This document shows, in pieces, positions 11,686-18,651 of a DNA stretch of 64,000 bases. The notes under the pieces are model-generated. The model saw only the letters and a program-made list of their open reading frames with translations. It was not told where the DNA came from and made no database searches. Each line of letters starts with the position of its first letter. Position 1 is the stretch's first letter. The DNA is taken from IMG/VR virus record IMGVR_UViG_3300031884_000002, positions 186,001 to 250,000 of that record, one strand, 5' to 3'. The translations under genes and the position numbers were made by a program.

Positions 11686-12516
11686 ATGTCAAACTACGAA
11701 ATAAATGTTCTCGTCAATGGTTCACGTTGTAAAATCTATTCCCACAATGGAAAACGATTTATAGAAGCAAAATCAGGTTCTAATTATGTATTAGAAATTA
11801 AAAATAATTCATATAATAGAGTTCTATCAGTATCCAGTGTCGATTCGTTAAATACGATTACTGGAAAAAATGAAGATGCATTAACTGGGGCTGGTTATGT
11901 TATAAATGGATATACATCCGTAAAAATAGATGGATTTAGAATTAGCGATAATGAGGTATCACAATTTAAGTTCGATGTAAAATCAAAAGGATATGCCGCA
12001 TCTAAAAAAGATGGAAGTGAACGTAATGTTGGAGTTATTGGTGTTCGTATTTTTAATGAAAAAATAAAACCGACAGTAAGTTATACTAAATATAATAACG
12101 ATTATCTAAGTTGTGATAATACAAACCCATCGAAATATTATAATGATATAACATGGGGAAGTTCGATACACTCCCAAACAATGTGTAATGCATCAAATTG
12201 CACGTCTAATTCTTCTATTGGTGGATTATATGGAGATGGTAAATATGGATACAACATAAATAACGTGGTGCAAAACTATCCAATAGAACCCAGAGGATTT
12301 GATATGTCAACTTCATTTGGAGAAGCGAAGGAAAGTAAAGTTATCGAAGTAGAGTTTGAAAGGCAAAATATAATAGATTCAATTGATATTTATTACGCTA
12401 CAAGGGAATCTTTAATTGAGATGGGAGTTCCTATAACAAGTGAAAAACAAGTAGCATTTCCCGAACCTTTCAAAGAATCAAGATACTGTGAGCCTCCTAA
12501 AAATTGGAAACCATAA
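11686..12516 (+). CDS. Hypothetical beta-rich protein
   Basis: 276-aa ORF with promoter, SD-like sequence and terminator. Confidence 0.7.
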   Translation: MSNYEINVLVNGSRCKIYSHNGKRFIEAKSGSNYVLEIKNNSYNRVLSVSSVDSLNTITGKNEDALTGAGYVINGYTSVKIDGFRISDNEVSQFKFDVKSKGYAASKKDGSERNVGVIGVRIFNEKIKPTVSYTKYNNDYLSCDNTNPSKYYNDITWGSSIHSQTMCNASNCTSNSSIGGLYGDGKYGYNINNVVQNYPIEPRGFDMSTSFGEAKESKVIEVEFERQNIIDSIDIYYATRESLIEMGVPITSEKQVAFPEPFKESRYCEPPKNWKP

Positions 12517-12545: not shown

Positions 12546-13097
12546 TTATTGAGGATAAATGTCTTTTAGAAATTGAGGAGTTTCAAATACACTACCTTCT
12601 TTACAAATATTTCTATATAAATCTTTATAATATGTATTAGTATGAATATATTTAGGATTATATTCATCAAGTTTATGTAATAATGAAGTTGTCGTGGTTG
12701 GCATTTTTAAACACCATCCTACCATTGGTTTAGTATAAAAATCATCTTGGTCTGTTGGACTATCGAATACCACTTCTCCATATTCAATATCAACCTTATA
12801 TTCTCCATATACTGGTTCTTTTCGATACATATCATTATTATCATATGTAATAGGAATATAATTACGAGACATTTTAAGTATATCTCCTTCATATAAATCT
12901 TTTAAATAGTTGTCCTGAAGCCCAGTATATCTTTGTATAACACATTCTGATAAAGGTATTAACACAGTTGGTCCTGCATTTCCTAATACTACAATACAAT
13001 TAGATTCCAGTTCTTCAAATATAAAGTAATACATGTTATTTAACTTTTGATTCCATGCTCTAAATTTAAGAGTATTTATATCCATATTATTTTCCAT
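12546..13097 (-). CDS. YopX family protein (second copy)
   Basis: LKFRAWN..QRYTGLQDNYLKDLYEGDIL..GSVFETPQFL. Confidence 0.85.
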   Translation of the reverse strand: MENNMDINTLKFRAWNQKLNNMYYFIFEELESNCIVVLGNAGPTVLIPLSECVIQRYTGLQDNYLKDLYEGDILKMSRNYIPITYDNNDMYRKEPVYGEYKVDIEYGEVVFDSPTDQDDFYTKPMVGWCLKMPTTTTSLLHKLDEYNPKYIHTNTYYKDLYRNICKEGSVFETPQFLKDIYPQ

Positions 13098-14169
13098 CTC
13101 TTACTTGATTATCCAAGAATGAAAATACGTCAGATACCCAATTATTATAATCTGGCATATTTACATCTAATCTATCATTTCTTACTAATTTAAAAAATGC
13201 ATTTCTATCTAATTTTGGTATTTTATTTTCAGTTAATATTTCTTGAAGATGTAATTGGGAAGTAGTTCCTAACATAGTATCTTTTAATTGCATCAATGCA
13301 TAATTACGTTCTATTATAGATTTATTAGTAACAATATTCTCACATACTACAAACTTATTTCGCATATCAGTCGCATGATTCACAATCTCATCAATAGTAT
13401 GAATTGTTTCTTCTTTTAAATATGGAAAATGCTTACATACAGTTTTTAAACCGGCTCTTTCAATTCCATTTATATTATCACTTTTATCTCCGTCCATACT
13501 TCTAAATAACACAAAATTATTAGGATGAATATTATATTCCGAAATAACTTCATTCACTCCATATATTCGTTTTTTAGTAGGAGAATATATTTGAACTTTA
13601 GAACTTGCCAACTGTAAAAAATCCTTATCAGTTGACATTATAGTTACTTTTTTGGAGTTTTTAAATTGCTCCAATGCCAGATAAGATATTACGTCATCGG
13701 CTTCAACCATATTTTCGCTTACTATATTTACTGGTAATACTTGAAGATAATTTATAAATTGAAGATATTCTTTTTGTTTCTGTTGGTCTTCATTATCAGG
13801 AGTAGAATCATCATCATATACTCTATTCAATCTAATTTTATTTGTGCTATATGCTTTATAGGCAGGGAAGATTGCTTTTCTTTTTTGAGACCCCCCAACT
13901 CCGTCAAATACTACTATACAACGAGAAGGAGTTAATAATTTAATTGCCGCACCTAAAGATTTTAGAGAAGCCACAACTCCACCACTATGTTCGCCATTGG
14001 CATTCATTGAGACGGTGGCACAAAATGCTCGGATGAATAGATTATTACCATCAACTATTAAGATATGATTATTAGTTTTATCTCTCCAGTTTAAATGGGA
14101 ATCCTTCATTTCGGACTTTATGTTTTTAAAAAAAGAAAATAACTTGGCTTTATCTAAATCATCACTCAT
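13087..14169 (-). CDS. 5'-3' exonuclease/flap endonuclease (PolI 5' nuclease, T4 RNase H-like)
   Basis: ILIVDGNNLFIRAF, VVFDG, EADDVI, STDKDFLQL, GDKSDNINGI. Confidence 0.92.
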   Translation of the reverse strand: MSDDLDKAKLFSFFKNIKSEMKDSHLNWRDKTNNHILIVDGNNLFIRAFCATVSMNANGEHSGGVVASLKSLGAAIKLLTPSRCIVVFDGVGGSQKRKAIFPAYKAYSTNKIRLNRVYDDDSTPDNEDQQKQKEYLQFINYLQVLPVNIVSENMVEADDVISYLALEQFKNSKKVTIMSTDKDFLQLASSKVQIYSPTKKRIYGVNEVISEYNIHPNNFVLFRSMDGDKSDNINGIERAGLKTVCKHFPYLKEETIHTIDEIVNHATDMRNKFVVCENIVTNKSIIERNYALMQLKDTMLGTTSQLHLQEILTENKIPKLDRNAFFKLVRNDRLDVNMPDYNNWVSDVFSFLDNQVRDGK

Positions 14170-14483
14170 AAGTTTTTAATCCAATTCCATAATTTATTAT
14201 ACCATTTTATAATATATTTTCGTTTATGTTCTTTAATTGCGGTTTTCAATACTTTAGTAGGATATAATCTATTATTTAAGTTTGGTTCATCCAAATAAAA
14301 AACCAATCCAGTTGCTTTAGATAAAGGCTGTATTTCTAAAAACTCTTTGATATCAAATGCCGGAAACTTTTTATTTATAGTAGGTAATGTTATTCCCTTA
14401 AAAGAATCAATAGTATTTGATTCAATTGGAATGTTGAATGGTTTACGTTGTTCGTTTAATATTTTTTCTTTACGATGTCCCAT
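14166..14483 (-). CDS. Small chimeric protein: major-capsid-like segment plus prohead-protease-like segment
   Basis: aa 28-65 FKGITLPTINKKFP..EIQPLSKATGLVFYLD resembles the gp23 QPxxxPTGxxF region; aa 68-91 match ORF 17310..17717. Confidence 0.55.
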   Translation of the reverse strand: MGHRKEKILNEQRKPFNIPIESNTIDSFKGITLPTINKKFPAFDIKEFLEIQPLSKATGLVFYLDEPNLNNRLYPTKVLKTAIKEHKRKYIIKWYNKLWNWIKNL

Positions 14484-14489
14484 ATAAAA

Positions 14490-14517
14490 AGTATATACTA
14501 AATTGAAACATAATCAA
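14490..14517 (-). promoter_or_regulatory. sigma70-type promoter TTGATT-16-TATACT, 6 nt from ATG
   Basis: Read on the minus strand. Confidence 0.65.
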
Positions 14518-14534
14518 CTTATTTTAGAAAATAA

Positions 14535-14561
14535 AAAAGAGTGGACTTTCACCACTCTTTT
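14535..14561 (-). terminator. Intrinsic terminator after the recA C-fragment
   Basis: aaaagagtgg..ccactctttt inverted repeat with T-tract. Confidence 0.75.
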
Positions 14562-14580
14562 CGGTAACTATTTAGAAGAG

Positions 14581-15858
14581 TTATTCTTCTGATTTTGATT
14601 CAGTAATAGGAGGAACTTCCTCTGATACTTCTTCAATGTCTTCCACAATTTTAGAATTAGGGTCTCTATAATTCATAATATAATCATTACAAATCACTTG
14701 ATAAAACTCTTCTTTAAGATCTTTATCAGAGTTCATAAGTTCTACAAACTTAGAAGTATTAAACTCCAATGATTCTCCATTTGCTCTTTTCCATGTATAT
14801 TTAGCAGCAGTTCCAGTTATAATTCCACGCTCTTTTGAGAAATTAAGCCAACTTGCCAAATCTTGGATACCGGAATCATAATGGATTTCAAATTGTGCTC
14901 CTCGTGCTCCCGGTCCCATTCTACTCTTAATAACTTGACAAGTACATTTTACTCCAATTACTTCATCATTTTTCTTCAATTTTCCAATGGTTCCCATTCT
15001 TACTCTGGTAGAACACGCATAACTTAAAGATTTTCCACCGGGAGTAGTCCATTTGTCTCCGAATGGACCTGCATTCATATTAAATCTTAATTGATTAGTA
15101 AATACAATCAGGATTCTTTGTTTAGCAATAAGACCGGTTATTTTTCGGAATGCCTTTCCTAAGATTAGGGATTTTCCTGTATTATATCCATCAATCCCAT
15201 GTTCTGCTTCAAGTTCTTTTTCGATAGTAGCTTGTGCTACTGAATCAATAAAAATAGTTAATAATTTATCTTTATTTGCTTTTCTAAAAGCACCTATACA
15301 AGTTTCTATATGTGTAAATAAATCTTCCAATGTTGTAAATGGAACATAATTTGTATTTTTAACATTTACTCCAAGCGCAGTCCAAAACTTTCTATCAACT
15401 GCAAACTCAGAATCAAAAAATACACTATATCCACCAAGTTTACTTGTTTCTGCAATAATATGAGCGCACATTAAAGATTTACCGGTGTTATGATTTAGCA
15501 TCCCATTTCCAAAATAACAATGTTCTGGATGTTCGACCGTAATATCTACAATTTTATATTTTCCAATTAAAGCAACTGATAATACTATACTATAAGTTTC
15601 ATCATCACATAAAATACTATGTTTATTAGGGATTATATCTTTACATTCTACCCATCCAGAATTTGTAAAAAACTTATGTTCTCGACTCACTTTTATAGTT
15701 TTTCCATTATCTAATGTTACTAAATATGTATCCAATATACCTTTATTAACAAATCTGGTTATTTTTGTATATTCACCATTCAATGTTTTTACTTTTATGG
15801 TTTTTCCTTCTTTAAGGAGAGAATCTACTTCTCCTACAGTTATTATTTTTTTATTCAT
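14581..15858 (-). CDS. recA: RecA/UvsX C-fragment: 124-aa IntC plus 301-aa C-extein
   Basis: ..VSREHKFF..IVDITVEHPEHCYFGNGMLNHN|TGKSL..FFDSE..IFIDSVA..FTNQLR..TTPGGKSL. Confidence 0.9.
   Translation of the reverse strand: MNKKIITVGEVDSLLKEGKTIKVKTLNGEYTKITRFVNKGILDTYLVTLDNGKTIKVSREHKFFTNSGWVECKDIIPNKHSILCDDETYSIVLSVALIGKYKIVDITVEHPEHCYFGNGMLNHNTGKSLMCAHIIAETSKLGGYSVFFDSEFAVDRKFWTALGVNVKNTNYVPFTTLEDLFTHIETCIGAFRKANKDKLLTIFIDSVAQATIEKELEAEHGIDGYNTGKSLILGKAFRKITGLIAKQRILIVFTNQLRFNMNAGPFGDKWTTPGGKSLSYACSTRVRMGTIGKLKKNDEVIGVKCTCQVIKSRMGPGARGAQFEIHYDSGIQDLASWLNFSKERGIITGTAAKYTWKRANGESLEFNTSKFVELMNSDKDLKEEFYQVICNDYIMNYRDPNSKIVEDIEEVSEEVPPITESKSEE
15487..15858 (-). mobile_element. Atypically split intein RecA, long C-fragment (blocks B, F, G; +1 Thr)
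   Basis: Block B SREH and terminal HN|T in one ORF; block A absent. Confidence 0.9.
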
Positions 15859-16940
15859 ATAATATTTCTTTTTAATTTTTCTAAATTTTTATTGTCTATT
15901 ATTATTTTACCAGAATTTATAAGAGTCGATATAAAATTAATATCATATTTTGATATGTCAATATCATTCTCCGTCAAATACCCTCCATATTTTAAATTAA
16001 ATCTGGAACAATATTCTTTTAATGCCTCTGATTTTAACACATTTAATCTAATTGGCAACATATTATATGGTTTTATTTCATAAATCGAATTTCCTATTAC
16101 TATATCAGGACAGTATGTTCGACCAATTCCCATATCATCTTTATATTTTATTCTATGTTTTGATATTTGGAATGTAATATTGTTAAAAATCAAATGACAC
16201 ATTATTCGCAATTCTAATGAAGATCTACAAAAATATTTTATTCCATCGTTTAATATCCAACACTTAACTCCAATTCCTGCATTTTTTCCGGGCGATTTAC
16301 CATACATCGGATTTAACCGTCCGGTTTGTGGATTATTTTTAGGATATCCGTATTTTTCACATAATTGCTTGCATTTTACACTTCCAAATCCAAATTCATT
16401 CTTCAATGTATTATAAACTTGCTGTTTATATTTTAACTTATGTTTTAATTCCTCAAATCTCTTTATGATTTTTGAGGTAATTGGTTTTAATTCTACTCCC
16501 CGTGTAATTGGTATTGCTTTTCTTCCGTTTATCTTAGACTGTATATTAATATAATTTTTAGAATTCTCTTTTCTCTGTATATCTAAATTTTTATATTTTA
16601 AAAAATATAAAACTTGCTTATGCGAAATATTTTTCATTATGTTTTTAACATCTTGTAATATTCCTCCATTATTAATGGATTCCAATACTAACATTCCATA
16701 TATTTTATCTAATTCTATAAGTTTTATATTTCTTTTAGCAAGCGCATATTCACTAAGTTGATTTGATTTATATTTAATGTTATTATATTTTAATTTATCA
16801 ACTAAATTAAATTCATTTGCAATTCTCCTAATAGGCTTTCTTCCAATTTTTAATTGGAAGATTTCCGTTTCGCTTAAACCATCGTGTATAGATGATATAA
16901 TCGTGTCTATTGTCTGTGCATCTGTTACTTTTTTAGCCAT
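15855..16940 (-). CDS. Free-standing endonuclease, TnsA-like PD-(D/E)xK, between the RecA intein halves
   Basis: NPMYGK motif; CRSSLE..IKYKD..RTYCPDIVI..YEIKP; ATGA overlap with the IntC ORF. Confidence 0.75.
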   Translation of the reverse strand: MAKKVTDAQTIDTIISSIHDGLSETEIFQLKIGRKPIRRIANEFNLVDKLKYNNIKYKSNQLSEYALAKRNIKLIELDKIYGMLVLESINNGGILQDVKNIMKNISHKQVLYFLKYKNLDIQRKENSKNYINIQSKINGRKAIPITRGVELKPITSKIIKRFEELKHKLKYKQQVYNTLKNEFGFGSVKCKQLCEKYGYPKNNPQTGRLNPMYGKSPGKNAGIGVKCWILNDGIKYFCRSSLELRIMCHLIFNNITFQISKHRIKYKDDMGIGRTYCPDIVIGNSIYEIKPYNMLPIRLNVLKSEALKEYCSRFNLKYGGYLTENDIDISKYDINFISTLINSGKIIIDNKNLEKLKRNII

Positions 16941-16987
16941 AATATTTAATATTGGTAATATAATATAAATATCAGGCTACATAAAAA

Positions 16988-17305
16988 TTATTCAATAATA
17001 ACTTCAATTAAAGTATCTTCCGTAACACAGCCTTCTAATCCTGATAATTCGGTCACTCTACCTACAGGTAGACCTCCGTGTGCTCTATTAGAAATTGCCA
17101 AATCTAATAAAGTTGAACCGGTTGATACCCATTCTTTTATTTCGGATGGATTATCATCTTCATCTACGAAATATGCTACTTTGGTTCCATCTTTAGATGC
17201 CTTATTCATTGCGGTTTGTAGCAACAACGCTAAATCATCTCTATTAACATTAGACTCTACTTCTACATGTTTTGATTTTGTATTTATATTTTTTTCTTTT
17301 GCCAT
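16988..17305 (-). CDS. recA: RecA/UvsX N-fragment: 92-aa extein plus 13-aa IntN
   Basis: VSTGSTLLDLAIS..GGLPVGRVTELSGLEG|CVTEDTLIEVIIE*. Confidence 0.9.
   Translation of the reverse strand: MAKEKNINTKSKHVEVESNVNRDDLALLLQTAMNKASKDGTKVAYFVDEDDNPSEIKEWVSTGSTLLDLAISNRAHGGLPVGRVTELSGLEGCVTEDTLIEVIIE
16991..17029 (-). mobile_element. Atypically split intein RecA, 13-aa N-fragment
   Basis: Block A only (CVTEDTLI), then TAA. Confidence 0.85.
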
Positions 17306-17309
17306 AATT

Positions 17310-17717
17310 TTATTTTTTAATTTGTTCTAAAGGTTCATTTGAAATAAGTGCTATATATTCAATTTCATAATTAGAAACTAAATATGAACCATTTTCTTGT
17401 TTATCAGATAAGTTTCCAATACCAACTGGGGTTAATGTAAAGGTTCCGCTTTCTAAGAATTCTTTAATTGGAATTTGTTTAGGATTTACAGTTGTATCTA
17501 AACAAAGAGATACTTTTCCATCTGGACTTAAGTTAATATCCGAAATTTGAGAACAAATATTTGTAATATCCTGATTCATACCACTATATAAAAATGCATG
17601 TTTAGTTTCAACATATTGTTTTTTATATTTAATAATAGCTTCATTTAAGACATCATTAGGATATATTCTATTATTTAGAGATAATTTATTTGCCATAAAT
17701 GGAAATTCTACATCCAT
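17310..17717 (-). CDS. Catalytically degenerate prohead protease (T4 gp21-like) paralog
   Basis: NNRIYPNDVL..ICSQI..TPVGIGNL..NYEIEYIALISNEP follows the gp21 motif order without the His/Ser/Asp motif residues. Confidence 0.6.
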   Translation of the reverse strand: MDVEFPFMANKLSLNNRIYPNDVLNEAIIKYKKQYVETKHAFLYSGMNQDITNICSQISDINLSPDGKVSLCLDTTVNPKQIPIKEFLESGTFTLTPVGIGNLSDKQENGSYLVSNYEIEYIALISNEPLEQIKK

Positions 17718-17723
17718 AGAAAT

Positions 17724-17751
17724 ATTATATCAACTTTTTTAGTTTTATCAA
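17724..17751 (-). promoter_or_regulatory. sigma70-type promoter TTGATA-16-TATAAT, 6 nt from ATG
   Basis: Read on the minus strand; extended -10 TG present. Confidence 0.7.
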
Positions 17752-17820: not shown

Positions 17821-18651
17821 TTAAGATGATTTTGCAAAAAACTTGTCAAAATCTTCTTCTTCTGCCGCAGTTGGAACCGGCGTTGCAGTTTCAGCAACGT
17901 CTTTTTTATCAACTGTAGCCGATGCTTTTTCGACTTCGGCTGTCGAAGGCTCTTGACCTTCTGGAGCCAAATAATCTTCGATAATTGCGTCCAATTCCTC
18001 ATACGTCTTCAATGGGAATACTTGAGTAATATCCAATTGTTTTCGGATGCTTTCCATAGCCTCTTTATTGGTAGGAGATACCGCTAAAGTTTTCTTCGGA
18101 CTTGGAATAATAGTTGTCTCAGGAAAAGGTTTTCCAGTTTTCTTATCAATTTTCTGACCTTTTTCAATGAATTTAACGTCAATATCATTGCCTTCACGTA
18201 AATCTGTAATATCGCCCCATTCAGTATTACAATAAGAAAGCAATTGCTTATATACCGTAATTCCAAATCCCCAGAAACGAACCCCTTGTTCCTCTTCACC
18301 ACGAACAATAATAGGAACATAAGTTCTAGCAACCGACTTAAAGTGCTTGTTTGCTAATTCCTTTTCTTCCGTAGTACCGTTTGTAGTAAGAGCCTCAAAT
18401 CTCTCTTGAAATGGATCAGGTTTTCCAAAAGTGGAAGGTGCCAATATAGAAGCAATTCCATTGAACTTGTAATAAAACTTCAATTCAATAAATGGAGAAT
18501 CTTGTTCTTCACCATTTGGGCGATAAGGAACTATTCGGATTCTTTGAGTACCTTCTCTTGGTTTCCAGAGAAGACGATTAAAATCAACGGTTTTTTTACC
18601 AGATTCTAATTGTTTAAGTTTATTTTGTAGTTTTTCTATGTTAAGTGCCAT
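17821..18651 (-). CDS. Single-stranded DNA-binding protein (T4 gp32-like)
   Basis: LWKP..IRIVPY..PFIE..VRGEEEQGVRFWGFG..GDITDLREGND; acidic tail EEEDFDKFF; next to recA. Confidence 0.8.
   Translation of the reverse strand: MALNIEKLQNKLKQLESGKKTVDFNRLLWKPREGTQRIRIVPYRPNGEEQDSPFIELKFYYKFNGIASILAPSTFGKPDPFQERFEALTTNGTTEEKELANKHFKSVARTYVPIIVRGEEEQGVRFWGFGITVYKQLLSYCNTEWGDITDLREGNDIDVKFIEKGQKIDKKTGKPFPETTIIPSPKKTLAVSPTNKEAMESIRKQLDITQVFPLKTYEELDAIIEDYLAPEGQEPSTAEVEKASATVDKKDVAETATPVPTAAEEEDFDKFFAKSS

What the first reader, a model, noticed from the sequence alone, without database searches (positions are those of the whole stretch)
14166..14483. Mini-protein fusing a major-capsid Gol-like segment to a prohead-protease segment: candidate immune decoy
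Seen: aa 68-91 NLNNRLYPTKVLKTAIKEHKRKYI match SLNNRIYPNDVLNEAIIKYKKQYV of ORF 17310..17717 (13/24 identical). The gene sits in the replication block behind a leaderless sigma70-type promoter. Known, from memory: the T4 gp23 Gol region MVRRAIPNLIAFDICGVQPMNSPTGQVFAL binds EF-Tu and triggers the Lit protease; aa 28-65 here (LPTINKKFPAFDIKEFLEIQPLSKATGLVFYLD) follow that pattern. Inference: head-protein epitopes made before the real head proteins could titrate capsid- or protease-sensing defences, or disturb competing phage assembly.
Basis: partly seen in the sequence, partly recalled or inferred. Interest (0 to 1): 0.75.

Follow-up and report, generated by a model that had tools for sequence, protein, structure and literature searches.

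The report
Early phage mini-protein mimicking head proteins
A 353-kb freshwater T4-like phage carries a small early accessory gene whose product joins a copy of the capsid protein's most conserved N-terminal motif to a piece of the head-protease fold; similar capsid-motif mini-proteins occur in other uncultured phages under purifying selection, and what they do is untested.

Summary
ORF 14166..14483 (-) encodes 105 aa. Residues 26-65 match the N-arm ('Gol-region') motif of T4-type major capsid proteins: a profile built from 117 other sequences gives E 4.6e-11. Residues 49-91 match the N-terminal strand-turn-helix of S77 prohead proteases (E 8e-4). Within that stretch, residues 68-91 match ORF 17310..17717 at 13/24. 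That ORF has an S77 protease fold without the catalytic His and Ser motifs.

The gene is a 333-bp cassette with its own sigma70-type leaderless promoter. It overlaps the RNase H start codon (ATGA) and is missing from the closest relative found.

It is not unique. Small proteins that keep only this capsid motif occur in other uncultured T4-like phages, always outside head modules. Two groups have dN/dS of 0.18-0.45, and two sit at the same RNase H junction with an alignable promoter.

The same genome holds two more capsid-gene fragments.

Best reading: an early-made mimic of head-protein docking motifs that competes for a partner of the nascent capsid protein.

The immune-decoy idea fits the timing but is untested. 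Assembly interference and a recombination relic remain live rivals. The complex prediction gave no answer.

The parts
14166..14483 (-). Mini-protein gene, 105 aa (P0001)
   Evidence: ORF list. The same protein is seen on 16 contigs of lake-water metagenomes. No sequence variants were found in the four runs laid on it.
14289..14408 (-). Residues 26-65: MCP N-arm / Gol-region motif (LP..x..KEF.x.QP.x.G.VFYLD)
   Evidence: N-arm HMM E 4.6e-11. 16/40 identical to the own MCP, z 13.9. 11 of the 16 shared residues use different codons, and third-position identity is 28%, which equals chance. In register with T4 gp23 ~93-128.
14211..14339 (-). Residues 49-91: S77 prohead-protease N-terminal strand-turn-helix (NLNNRLYP + helix). 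It overlaps the last strand of the MCP motif, so the junction is seamless around G-L-V.
   Evidence: S77 HMM E 8e-4. Pfam PF03420 E 0.033 and PHROG 207 E 0.0047. 13/24 identity to ORF 17310..17717 over residues 68-91.
14172..14258 (-). Residues 76-104: long basic amphipathic Lys/Trp-rich C-terminal helix
   Evidence: AF2 with a 12-sequence alignment gives helix 76-104 at pLDDT 87-95; residues 1-75 are low-confidence and extended. Hydrophobic moment is 0.57 for the last 18 aa, and residues 66-105 carry net charge +8.
14490..14517 (-). Early sigma70-type promoter TTGATT-16-TATACT; the -10 element ends 6 nt before the ATG (leaderless)
   Evidence: Scan. The same geometry is 15-fold enriched at gene starts in this genome. 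It aligns with the promoters of the mini-genes P0004 and P0007 in related phages.
14534..14562 (-). Intrinsic terminator after UvsX, immediately upstream of the cassette
   Evidence: Scan. Conserved in relative L007.
14186..14518 (-). 333-bp cassette (promoter + ORF) missing from the closest relative found
   Evidence: blastn of the window against L007 (RNase H 93% identical). In L007 the terminator is followed directly by the RNase H ATG.
13087..14169 (-). RNase H / 5'-3' exonuclease gene. Its ATG overlaps the mini-gene stop (ATGA at 14166-14169).
   Evidence: Pfam 5_3_exonuc_N 6.7e-27; sequence. P0007 shows the same 4-nt overlap with RNase H in locus L049.
17310..17717 (-). ORF135: early, compact S77-protease-fold paralogue without the catalytic motifs. 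It is the partner of the 13/24 match.
   Evidence: S77 HMM 2.7e-5. The ESM Atlas model (pLDDT 0.81) aligns to S77 proteases at TM 0.80 over 131 of 135 residues. The GELDH and GxSSRG motifs are absent in the MSA. It is a ~406-bp indel relative to L007.
17724..17751 (-). Promoter of ORF135: TTGATA-16-TATAAT (TG-extended), 6 nt before the ATG

Best explanation
Shown. This is a real accessory gene of a 353-kb freshwater T4-like phage, and its promoter type points to early expression. Its product is predicted to have two parts. The first is a flexible, mostly unstructured N-terminal ~75 residues that carry a copy of the capsid protein's N-arm motif. In T4 gp23 this stretch contains the Gol peptide and faces the scaffolding core in the prohead; the gp23 N-terminus more broadly is reported to direct fusion proteins to GroEL. 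The second part is a long, strongly basic amphipathic helix. Its first half is homologous to the N-terminal helix of the S77 prohead-protease fold.

Inferred mechanism: molecular mimicry. The protein is made from an early leaderless transcript, before the late head genes are on. It would present the docking motif in trans and occupy the binding site of whatever reads the nascent capsid protein's N-arm. Because of the timing, that partner is most likely a host-side factor: an immune sensor of head proteins, or EF-Tu/GroEL. The helix would supply a second contact, or oligomerisation, or membrane or acidic-protein binding.

Status of each step. Shown: the gene structure, both homologies, cassette and accessory status, the promoter type, and conservation and selection of the motif in sister families. 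Inferred: expression timing, binding, and the identity of the partner.
For: 1. Both homologies are statistically solid and specific within the genome.

2. The motif is kept at the protein level only. Against the own MCP, third codon positions are at chance identity, yet 16/40 residues are kept, many at positions that are invariant or nearly invariant across the family.

3. Other small proteins keep exactly Pfam Gp23 positions ~1-48 and nothing else of the MCP. They are P0004/7/8, P0002/6/9/10/19/37 and P0003/5/11. Several score above the Pfam gathering threshold. The six whose contigs were examined (P0002, P0003, P0004, P0007, P0008, P0037) all lie outside head modules, among replication, nucleotide-metabolism or endonuclease genes.

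4. Two of those groups are under purifying selection: dN/dS 0.18 and 0.29-0.45.

5. P0004 and P0007 occupy the same slot, immediately upstream of RNase H, with an alignable promoter; P0007 also has the same ATGA overlap. The window's gene is therefore a fast-evolving allele of a heritable locus in which only the motif is retained.

6. The promoter is of the early leaderless class (60/490 genes) and lacks the late motif.

7. The same genome has a second early-promoter MCP N-terminal paralogue (G000 11866-12246) and the early, catalytically dead protease ORF135. Head-protein look-alikes made early are thus a theme in this phage.

8. AF2 predicts a disordered motif-bearing arm plus a confident helix, as expected for a docking peptide.

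9. Literature. The gp23 N-terminal region is flexible in the prohead and probably contacts the scaffolding core (PMC9546572). The gp23 N-terminus targets fusion proteins to GroEL (PMC3012670). T4 MCP binds EF-Tu. MCPs and prohead proteases are immune triggers.
Against: No expression data exist: no RNA run could be listed. The host is unknown.

No partner was identified. The one complex prediction (MCP + protease + mini) returned 'no answer'.

The exact two-part form is a singleton with no sequence variation to measure selection on.

Its motif is the most degenerate of the mini-proteins at otherwise conserved positions (SVQPM to EIQPL, PSG to ATG). That could mean relaxed constraint.

The closest relative found does without the gene.

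The genome also contains a decaying MCP fragment broken by stop codons, so head-gene fragments also arise here as debris.

The selection argument against the own MCP partly reflects constraint on the MCP lineage rather than on the mini-gene.
Confidence: 0.4

Rival explanations
1. Head-assembly interference or regulation. The free N-arm peptide and protease strand-helix dock onto the phage's own, or a co-infecting relative's, MCP, scaffold or protease. They act as a dominant-negative 'microprotein'. This could be a weapon in phage-phage competition, which would fit a gene sitting in a slot otherwise filled by homing endonucleases. It could also act as a brake or size modulator of prohead assembly.
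For: In T4 the homologous gp23 stretch probably contacts the scaffolding core and then forms inter-capsomer contacts, and head-length mutations A94V and G97S map there (PMC9546572).

The helix is strongly basic (+8), while the phage's scaffold protein is very acidic.

The UvsX|RNase H slot is hypervariable among relatives and often holds endonuclease or methylase genes, typical of inter-phage conflict loci.

The partner ORF135 is a dead copy of the protease fold.
Against: The promoter is of the early type, long before its supposed targets are made, and there is no late motif.

An inhibitor of this kind would also poison the phage's own heads unless it were specific, and no such specificity is visible.

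The complex prediction with the own MCP and protease gave no answer.
Confidence: 0.2
2. Non-functional mosaic. The ORF is a by-product of illegitimate recombination or homing-endonuclease-associated repair that stitched 5' fragments of conserved head genes into a variable slot. It stays open by chance or because it is young, and it is transcribed only because a promoter came along with it.
For: The genome contains further head-gene fragments. One of them (G000 ~284836-285150) is broken by two TGA stops and lies next to GIY-YIG/NUMOD3-type endonuclease genes.

An endonuclease-like ORF sits directly upstream of the real protease gene, and one precedes the 126-aa MCP fragment.

In L035/L036 the mini-gene follows a DUF723 endonuclease-like gene.

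The gene is absent from the closest relative found.

The two-part form is a singleton.
Against: A 105-codon open frame in an AT-rich genome is unlikely to persist by chance (general reasoning, not computed here). The gene has a well-formed promoter of the phage's own early class and a precise ATGA coupling to RNase H.

The fragment is old. Synonymous sites are saturated against the own MCP, yet the motif residues persist.

Sister mini-genes at the same locus and elsewhere are under purifying selection and are stably inherited; P0037 alone is on 22 contigs in conserved synteny.
Confidence: 0.2
3. Packaged head-internal protein. The MCP N-arm and protease N-terminal motifs serve as prohead-core targeting signals. 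The small basic protein would then be encapsidated and delivered with the DNA, in the manner of T4 internal proteins with their capsid-targeting sequence.
For: In T4, the gp23 N-terminal region faces and probably contacts the scaffolding core; that gp21 is a core component is recalled from textbook knowledge, not checked here. T4 internal proteins are a diverse set of anti-restriction proteins that share only a targeting sequence (PMC3012670). The relative P0003 and the 126-aa paralogue also keep the propeptide motif KW.K.GLLEG of the MCP.
Against: The gene has an early rather than a late promoter. The window's protein lacks the propeptide part. No protease-site analysis was done and no virion proteome is available.
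Confidence: 0.1

Closest known systems
N-arm / Gol region of T4-type major capsid protein gp23 (Pfam PF07068, positions ~1-48)
   Same: Residues 26-65 are homologous to this stretch and carry the family's invariant P, QP, G, F/Y and D positions.
   Different: Nothing else of the HK97 fold is present. Homology stops right after FYLD. The gene is early, accessory and outside the head module. Identity to T4's own Gol peptide is low, and EF-Tu binding or Lit activation is untested.
S77 prohead core protease (T4 gp21, Pfam PF03420) and its catalytically dead ~130-aa paralogues such as ORF135
   Same: Residues 49-91 reproduce the strand-NxNxRxYP-helix element that opens the conserved core of the fold.
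   Different: Only about 40 residues of the fold are present. There are no catalytic residues, and the Pfam score (14.1 bits) is below the gathering threshold (27).
MicroProteins / dominant-negative single-motif proteins (e.g. Id proteins, plant LITTLE ZIPPER), and viral pseudo-substrate decoys such as poxvirus K3L. This comparison is from general knowledge.
   Same: It is a small protein made of an interaction motif copied from a larger protein, and is expected to act by competition.
   Different: No binding partner or competitive effect has been shown here. The donor proteins are the virus's own structural proteins, not host regulators.
Phage morons and early accessory genes in hypervariable slots of T4-like genomes
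   Same: It is a self-contained promoter + ORF cassette, inserted between a terminator and a core gene, and present or absent among close relatives.
   Different: Its coding content is recycled from head genes rather than being an orphan sequence or a host-derived gene.
T4 internal proteins with a capsid-targeting sequence
   Same: It is a small basic protein carrying a short head-related address motif.
   Different: The motif is different, the promoter is early, and there is no evidence of packaging.

Membership tests
T4-type major capsid protein (PF07068 / HK97 fold) | Conserved N-arm motif preceding the E-loop | tested here: met
   Custom HMM E 4.6e-11, positions 2-40. In-genome BLAST to the own MCP gives E 5e-7.
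T4-type major capsid protein (PF07068 / HK97 fold) | E-loop, P-domain spine helix and A-domain (the full ~450-575-aa fold) | tested here: not met
   The protein has 105 aa. Homology ends after FYLD, and Pfam matches only profile positions 2-47 of 376, at 11.2 bits against a cut-off of 24.4.
T4-type major capsid protein (PF07068 / HK97 fold) | Encoded in the head module and expressed late | tested here: not met
   It lies between UvsX and RNase H, has an early-type promoter and has no late motif.
Peptidase S77 prohead protease (PF03420) | N-terminal strand-NxNxRxYP-helix element | tested here: met
   HMM from 5 proteases gives E 8e-4 over residues 49-91, with the next ORF at E 2.1.
Peptidase S77 prohead protease (PF03420) | Catalytic His (GELxH) and Ser (GxSSRG) motifs and the rest of the fold; Pfam gathering score | tested here: not met
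   The ORF ends before these motifs. Pfam score is 14.1 bits against a cut-off of 27.
Gol peptide (activator of the Lit protease through EF-Tu) | Positional homology to gp23 residues 93-122 | tested here: met
   MSA with T4 gp23 from NC_000866.
Gol peptide (activator of the Lit protease through EF-Tu) | Significant similarity to the T4 Gol sequence itself | tested here: not met
   BLASTP against T4 gp23 finds no significant alignment in this region. The 'AFDI' match is out of register.
Gol peptide (activator of the Lit protease through EF-Tu) | Binds EF-Tu domains II/III and makes it a Lit substrate | not testable with these tools
Phage anti-defence decoy or inhibitor | Expressed before the trigger it mimics | tested here: inconclusive
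   The promoter is of the early leaderless class, but no RNA run could be listed.
Phage anti-defence decoy or inhibitor | Binds or blocks a defined immune sensor | not testable with these tools
   No host is known and no sensor candidate exists.
Moron / accessory cassette | Own promoter plus ORF, inserted between core genes, variable among close relatives | tested here: met
   It is a 333-bp indel relative to L007, placed between the UvsX terminator and the RNase H ATG.
Capsid-N-arm mini-proteins (grouping proposed here; no description of it was found in the literature searches run) | Under 200 aa, only Gp23 profile positions ~1-48, encoded outside head modules, followed by an aromatic-rich helix | tested here: met
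   Alignment A5 has invariant P34, Q52, P53 and D65. Sister proteins match Gp23 positions 1-48 only.

The most novel reading that the evidence does not exclude
T4-like phages have repeatedly turned short, highly conserved pieces of their own head proteins into early-expressed 'self-epitope' decoys. The pieces are the MCP N-arm/Gol motif and the S77 protease fold. These decoys would pre-occupy bacterial sensors that detect capsid protein or prohead protease. This would be an anti-defence principle not yet described for phages. The window's gene would be a bivalent version covering both triggers, working alongside the dead protease ORF135.
Probability: 0.15. Interest if true: 0.9.

Novelty: new variant of a known kind. 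Interest (0 to 1): 0.62.

Why it matters
The MCP N-arm motif is the most conserved part of T4-type capsid proteins, and it is the only capsid peptide with a classical immune read-out (Gol/Lit). MCPs and prohead proteases are now recognised as common triggers of bacterial immunity.

The motif has been copied into several groups of small proteins that are encoded away from head genes; two groups are under purifying selection. That gives a concrete, testable handle on three questions:
- What reads this motif in trans: a sensor, EF-Tu, GroEL or the scaffold?
- Do phages use fragments of their own structural proteins as decoys or dominant-negative regulators?
- How are new early genes assembled from pieces of core genes in endonuclease-rich variable slots?

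If the fragments turn out to be inert, the case is still a clean example of gene birth from recycled exapted fragments. It is also a warning that many short 'Gp23' or 'S77' hits in metagenomes are not truncated head genes.

Tried and rejected
- Close relatives of the exact protein. The word-based search and the viral-contig scan found only the protein itself. The exhaustive phmmer search found two distant proteins.
- Recent duplication or gene conversion from the own MCP. Rejected: nucleotide identity is 48% and third positions are at chance.
- MCP exon-1 left by an intron or endonuclease. I suspected this because many database 'proteins' stop just after FYLDFKYGT. Those turned out to be frameshifted MCP genes inside head modules of long-read assemblies, so they are artefacts unrelated to the mini-proteins.
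- ORF135 as a protease + UvsX N-terminus mosaic. The pairwise score is high (z 9.8). A UvsX N-terminal profile does not support it (E 6.1), and the whole ORF aligns structurally to the S77 fold. Treated as spurious.
- T4 Inh (protease inhibitor) as a relative of ORF135. No alignment.
- Phage-encoded chaperonin or co-chaperonin in the genome. None found by Pfam.
- Complex prediction of MCP + protease + mini. No answer.
- AF2 of ORF135 from a single sequence. Unusable, pLDDT 37.
- PDB sequence search and NCBIfam. Nothing found.
- Population variation for selection analysis. No variants in the gene.
- RNA evidence. No run could be listed.
- Literature searches for phage capsid decoys or mimics. 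Nothing relevant found.
Full report
**Setting.** The window is bases 186001-250000 of a 353,772-bp, AT-rich viral contig rated complete. It was recovered repeatedly from lake-water metagenomes. The contig is a T4-like jumbo phage. The region around the finding encodes gp32 (17821..18651), UvsX, RNase H/FEN (13087..14169) and a YopX protein, all on the minus strand. The head module lies about 75 kb away. It holds a 575-aa Gp23-family MCP at G000 274479-276206 and an S77 protease at 291273-291899.

- ORF 14166..14483 (-) encodes the 105 residues quoted.
- In a BLAST against all 2708 ORFs of the genome, its three best non-self hits are the phage's own MCP (residues 26-65 vs 72-111 of the 575-aa MCP, 40% identity, E 5e-7), ORF 17310..17717 (E 3e-4) and the phage's own protease (E 0.2).
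- Shuffle tests give z 13.9, 9.0 and 5.7 for these three.
- A 40-column HMM of the MCP N-arm region, built from 117 other sequences, retrieves only the MCP and this ORF from the genome (E 4.6e-11, full-length match).
- An HMM from five S77 proteases, including T4 gp21, retrieves the protease, ORF 17310..17717 (2.7e-5) and this ORF (8e-4, residues 49-91). Nothing else scores below E 2.
- Pfam and PHROGs give the same two families as top but sub-threshold hits.
- tblastn against cultured phages hits MCP genes of Flavobacterium, Campylobacter, Prochlorococcus and Rhodothermus phages with the N-terminal half.
- With T4 gp23 taken from NC_000866, the segment aligns to gp23 ~93-128, the Gol region.
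- The two homologies overlap at G-L-V-F-Y-L-D. This stretch can be read as the last strand of the MCP motif or as the strand that precedes NxNxRxYP in the protease. The junction is therefore seamless.

**The partner ORF.** ORF135 (17310..17717) is not merely a 'segment'.
- The ESM Atlas holds a confident model of it (pLDDT 0.81). That model superposes on S77 proteases at TM 0.80 over 131 of 135 residues.
- In an MSA with real proteases, the GELxH and GxSSRG catalytic motifs are missing.
- It is therefore a compact protease-fold protein that is probably inactive.
- The Atlas lists many clusters of ~130-aa viral proteins that look alike.
- An apparent similarity of its middle part to the UvsX N-terminus is not supported by a profile. 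I discount it.

**Gene anatomy.**
- Upstream of the ATG, the UvsX terminator (14534-14562) is followed by TTGATT-16-TATACT, and the -10 element ends 6 nt before the ATG.
- This leaderless geometry precedes 60 of 490 genes in the genome, mostly small ones, against 0.8% of all ATGs.
- Head genes and several endonuclease genes instead carry ATATTTATA, which this ORF lacks.
- The stop codon overlaps the RNase H start (ATGA).
- Against the closest relative found (L007, RNase H 93% identical), the promoter plus ORF is a clean 333-bp indel. In L007 the terminator runs straight into the RNase H ATG.
- ORF135 (~406 bp) and the UvsX intein/endonuclease block (1544 bp) are likewise absent from L007.
- Across relatives, the UvsX|RNase H junction is a variable slot. 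It holds an HNH-like gene, a methyltransferase, or unrelated small ORFs.

**Relatives.** The exact protein is a singleton, but the theme is not.
- Exhaustive and profile searches found small proteins that keep only the MCP N-arm motif (Pfam Gp23 positions ~1-48, several above the gathering score) with unrelated flanks.
- P0004 and P0007 (99-101 aa) lie immediately upstream of RNase H, as here, with an alignable promoter. P0007 also has the same ATGA overlap.
- P0008 lies immediately downstream of RNase H.
- A 130-aa group (P0002/6/9/10/19/37) sits in conserved synteny downstream of thymidylate synthase in another T4-like lineage. P0037 alone was read on 22 contigs.
- P0003/5/11 have a tail that aligns with the window protein's tail. 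P0003 also carries the MCP propeptide and lies among HNH and methylase genes.
- In every one of these proteins, MCP homology stops right after FY(L/M)D and is followed by an aromatic-rich helix.
- dN/dS is 0.18 for P0004/P0007 and 0.29-0.45 within the 130-aa group.
- Many other short 'Gp23' proteins in the databases are frameshifted MCP genes in head modules of long-read assemblies and are irrelevant.

**Age and constraint.** Against the own MCP, 16 of 40 residues are identical, but 11 of those use different codons. Third-position identity (28%) equals the compositional expectation (27%). The similarity is therefore not a recent duplication or gene conversion; it is kept at the protein level. 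One caveat: part of that constraint belongs to the MCP lineage. The window's motif is also the most degenerate of the set.

**More head-gene pieces in the same genome.**
- G000 11866-12246 encodes a 126-aa paralogue of MCP residues 27-138. It keeps the propeptide motif KWEKTGLLEG and sits behind an early leaderless promoter.
- G000 284944-285150 is a 68-aa ORF matching the MCP spine-helix region (Pfam 42.6 bits). It lies within a wider match broken by two TGA codons, next to GIY-YIG/NUMOD3-type genes.
- Fragments of head genes therefore arise here both as apparently maintained early genes and as debris.

**Structure.**
- AF2 with a 12-sequence alignment predicts residues 1-75 as extended and low-confidence. 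Residues 76-104 form a helix with pLDDT 87-95.
- The tail is amphipathic (hydrophobic moment 0.57), and residues 66-105 carry net charge +8.
- The complex prediction with MCP and protease returned no answer and is not used as evidence.

**Interpretation.** Three things are known about the homologous gp23 stretch in T4.
- It is disordered and inward-facing in the prohead, probably contacts the scaffolding core, and later forms inter-capsomer contacts. Head-length mutations map there (PMC9546572).
- The gp23 N-terminus directs fusion proteins to GroEL (PMC3012670).
- T4 MCP binds EF-Tu, and this region contains the Gol peptide that activates Lit (and textbook knowledge).

MCPs and prohead proteases are also triggers of Avs, CapRel, TIR and type I CBASS systems.

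A flexible copy of this motif tethered to a basic helix, made from an early promoter, is most simply a competitive mimic of the nascent MCP's N-arm. Timing favours a host-side partner, either a sensor or a chaperone/EF-Tu (confidence 0.4). The rivals are assembly interference, possibly in phage-phage conflict (0.2), a recombination relic (0.2), and a packaged internal protein (0.1).

It is compatible with all the data but has no direct support. A literal Lit decoy seems unlikely, because the Gol peptide itself activates Lit and EF-Tu cannot be titrated.

**Novelty.** The literature searches found no description of phage capsid decoys or mimics, or of capsid-motif mini-proteins. Curated libraries only give partial Gp23/S77 hits. 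I rate it a new variant of a known kind: an accessory early gene, or microprotein-type mimic, built from recycled head-gene motifs. There is a modest chance that it represents a new anti-defence principle.

Noticed in passing
window 14581-17305 (-): UvsX is a 'fractured gene'. A 105-aa N-terminal piece ends in a very short intein start (C-V-T-E-D...). It is followed by a free-standing 361-aa ORF with a late-type promoter (endonuclease-like at best: PHROG 945, E 0.011). Then comes a 425-aa piece that begins with most of a Hint domain (Pfam Intein_splicing) and continues as RecA/UvsX. The whole 1544-bp block is absent from relative L007 and present in L035/L036. It resembles the split-intein plus endonuclease arrangements described for metagenomic phage genes (recalled from memory).
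   Followed up: partly
window 17310-17717 (-): ORF135 is a compact S77 prohead-protease fold (Atlas TM 0.80) without the catalytic His and Ser motifs. It sits behind an early leaderless promoter and is absent from L007. The Atlas lists many ~130-aa viral clusters that look alike, some labelled YonD_N.
   Followed up: partly
G000:C1:11866-12246 (-) (locus L055 1867-2247): A second early-promoter paralogue of the MCP N-terminus, 126 aa. It covers MCP residues 27-138, including the propeptide motif, but has a degenerate QPM motif. It is flanked by endonuclease-like ORFs.
   Followed up: partly
G000:C1:284836-285150 (-) (locus L003 1609-1815): A 68-aa ORF matches the MCP spine-helix region (Pfam Gp23 42.6 bits, profile 148-195). 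It lies inside a longer match interrupted by two TGA codons, next to a GIY-YIG/NUMOD3-type gene. It is probably a decaying MCP or vertex-protein fragment.
   Followed up: partly
whole genome G000; examples at window 14490-14517 and 17724-17751: There are two clear promoter classes. About 60 genes have TTGACA-like -35 and TATACT/TATAAT -10 elements ending 5-7 nt before the ATG (leaderless early genes, many in a 20-80 kb block with near-identical promoters). About 60 genes have the motif ATATTTATA, including head genes and several endonuclease genes.
   Followed up: partly
loci L007-L013, junction between UvsX and RNase H: This junction is a hypervariable insertion slot among related phages. Its contents range from nothing to a 250-aa Cys-rich ORF (possibly HNH-like; not scanned against any family), a DUF723 gene plus a mini-gene, a 326-aa ORF resembling a DNA methyltransferase by eye (not scanned against any family), or unrelated small ORFs of 57-129 aa.
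   Followed up: partly
loci L053, L054 and many database proteins (P0012-P0120): Numerous 70-220-aa 'Gp23' proteins in public protein sets are pieces of frameshifted MCP genes in long-read or short contigs. They could be mistaken for capsid-motif mini-proteins.
   Followed up: yes
locus L044 (LR756511.1 ~242.6 kb): A 595-kb uncultured phage has a second, 297-aa S77-like protein far from its head module. It has a hydrophobic N-terminus, and the catalytic His position reads GELGM.
   Followed up: no
locus L004 2025-2744 (-), G000 291896-292615: A 239-aa zinc-finger, endonuclease-like ORF with a late promoter sits directly upstream of the real protease gene and overlaps it by 4 nt. This arrangement could export the 5' end of the protease gene when the element moves.
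   Followed up: no
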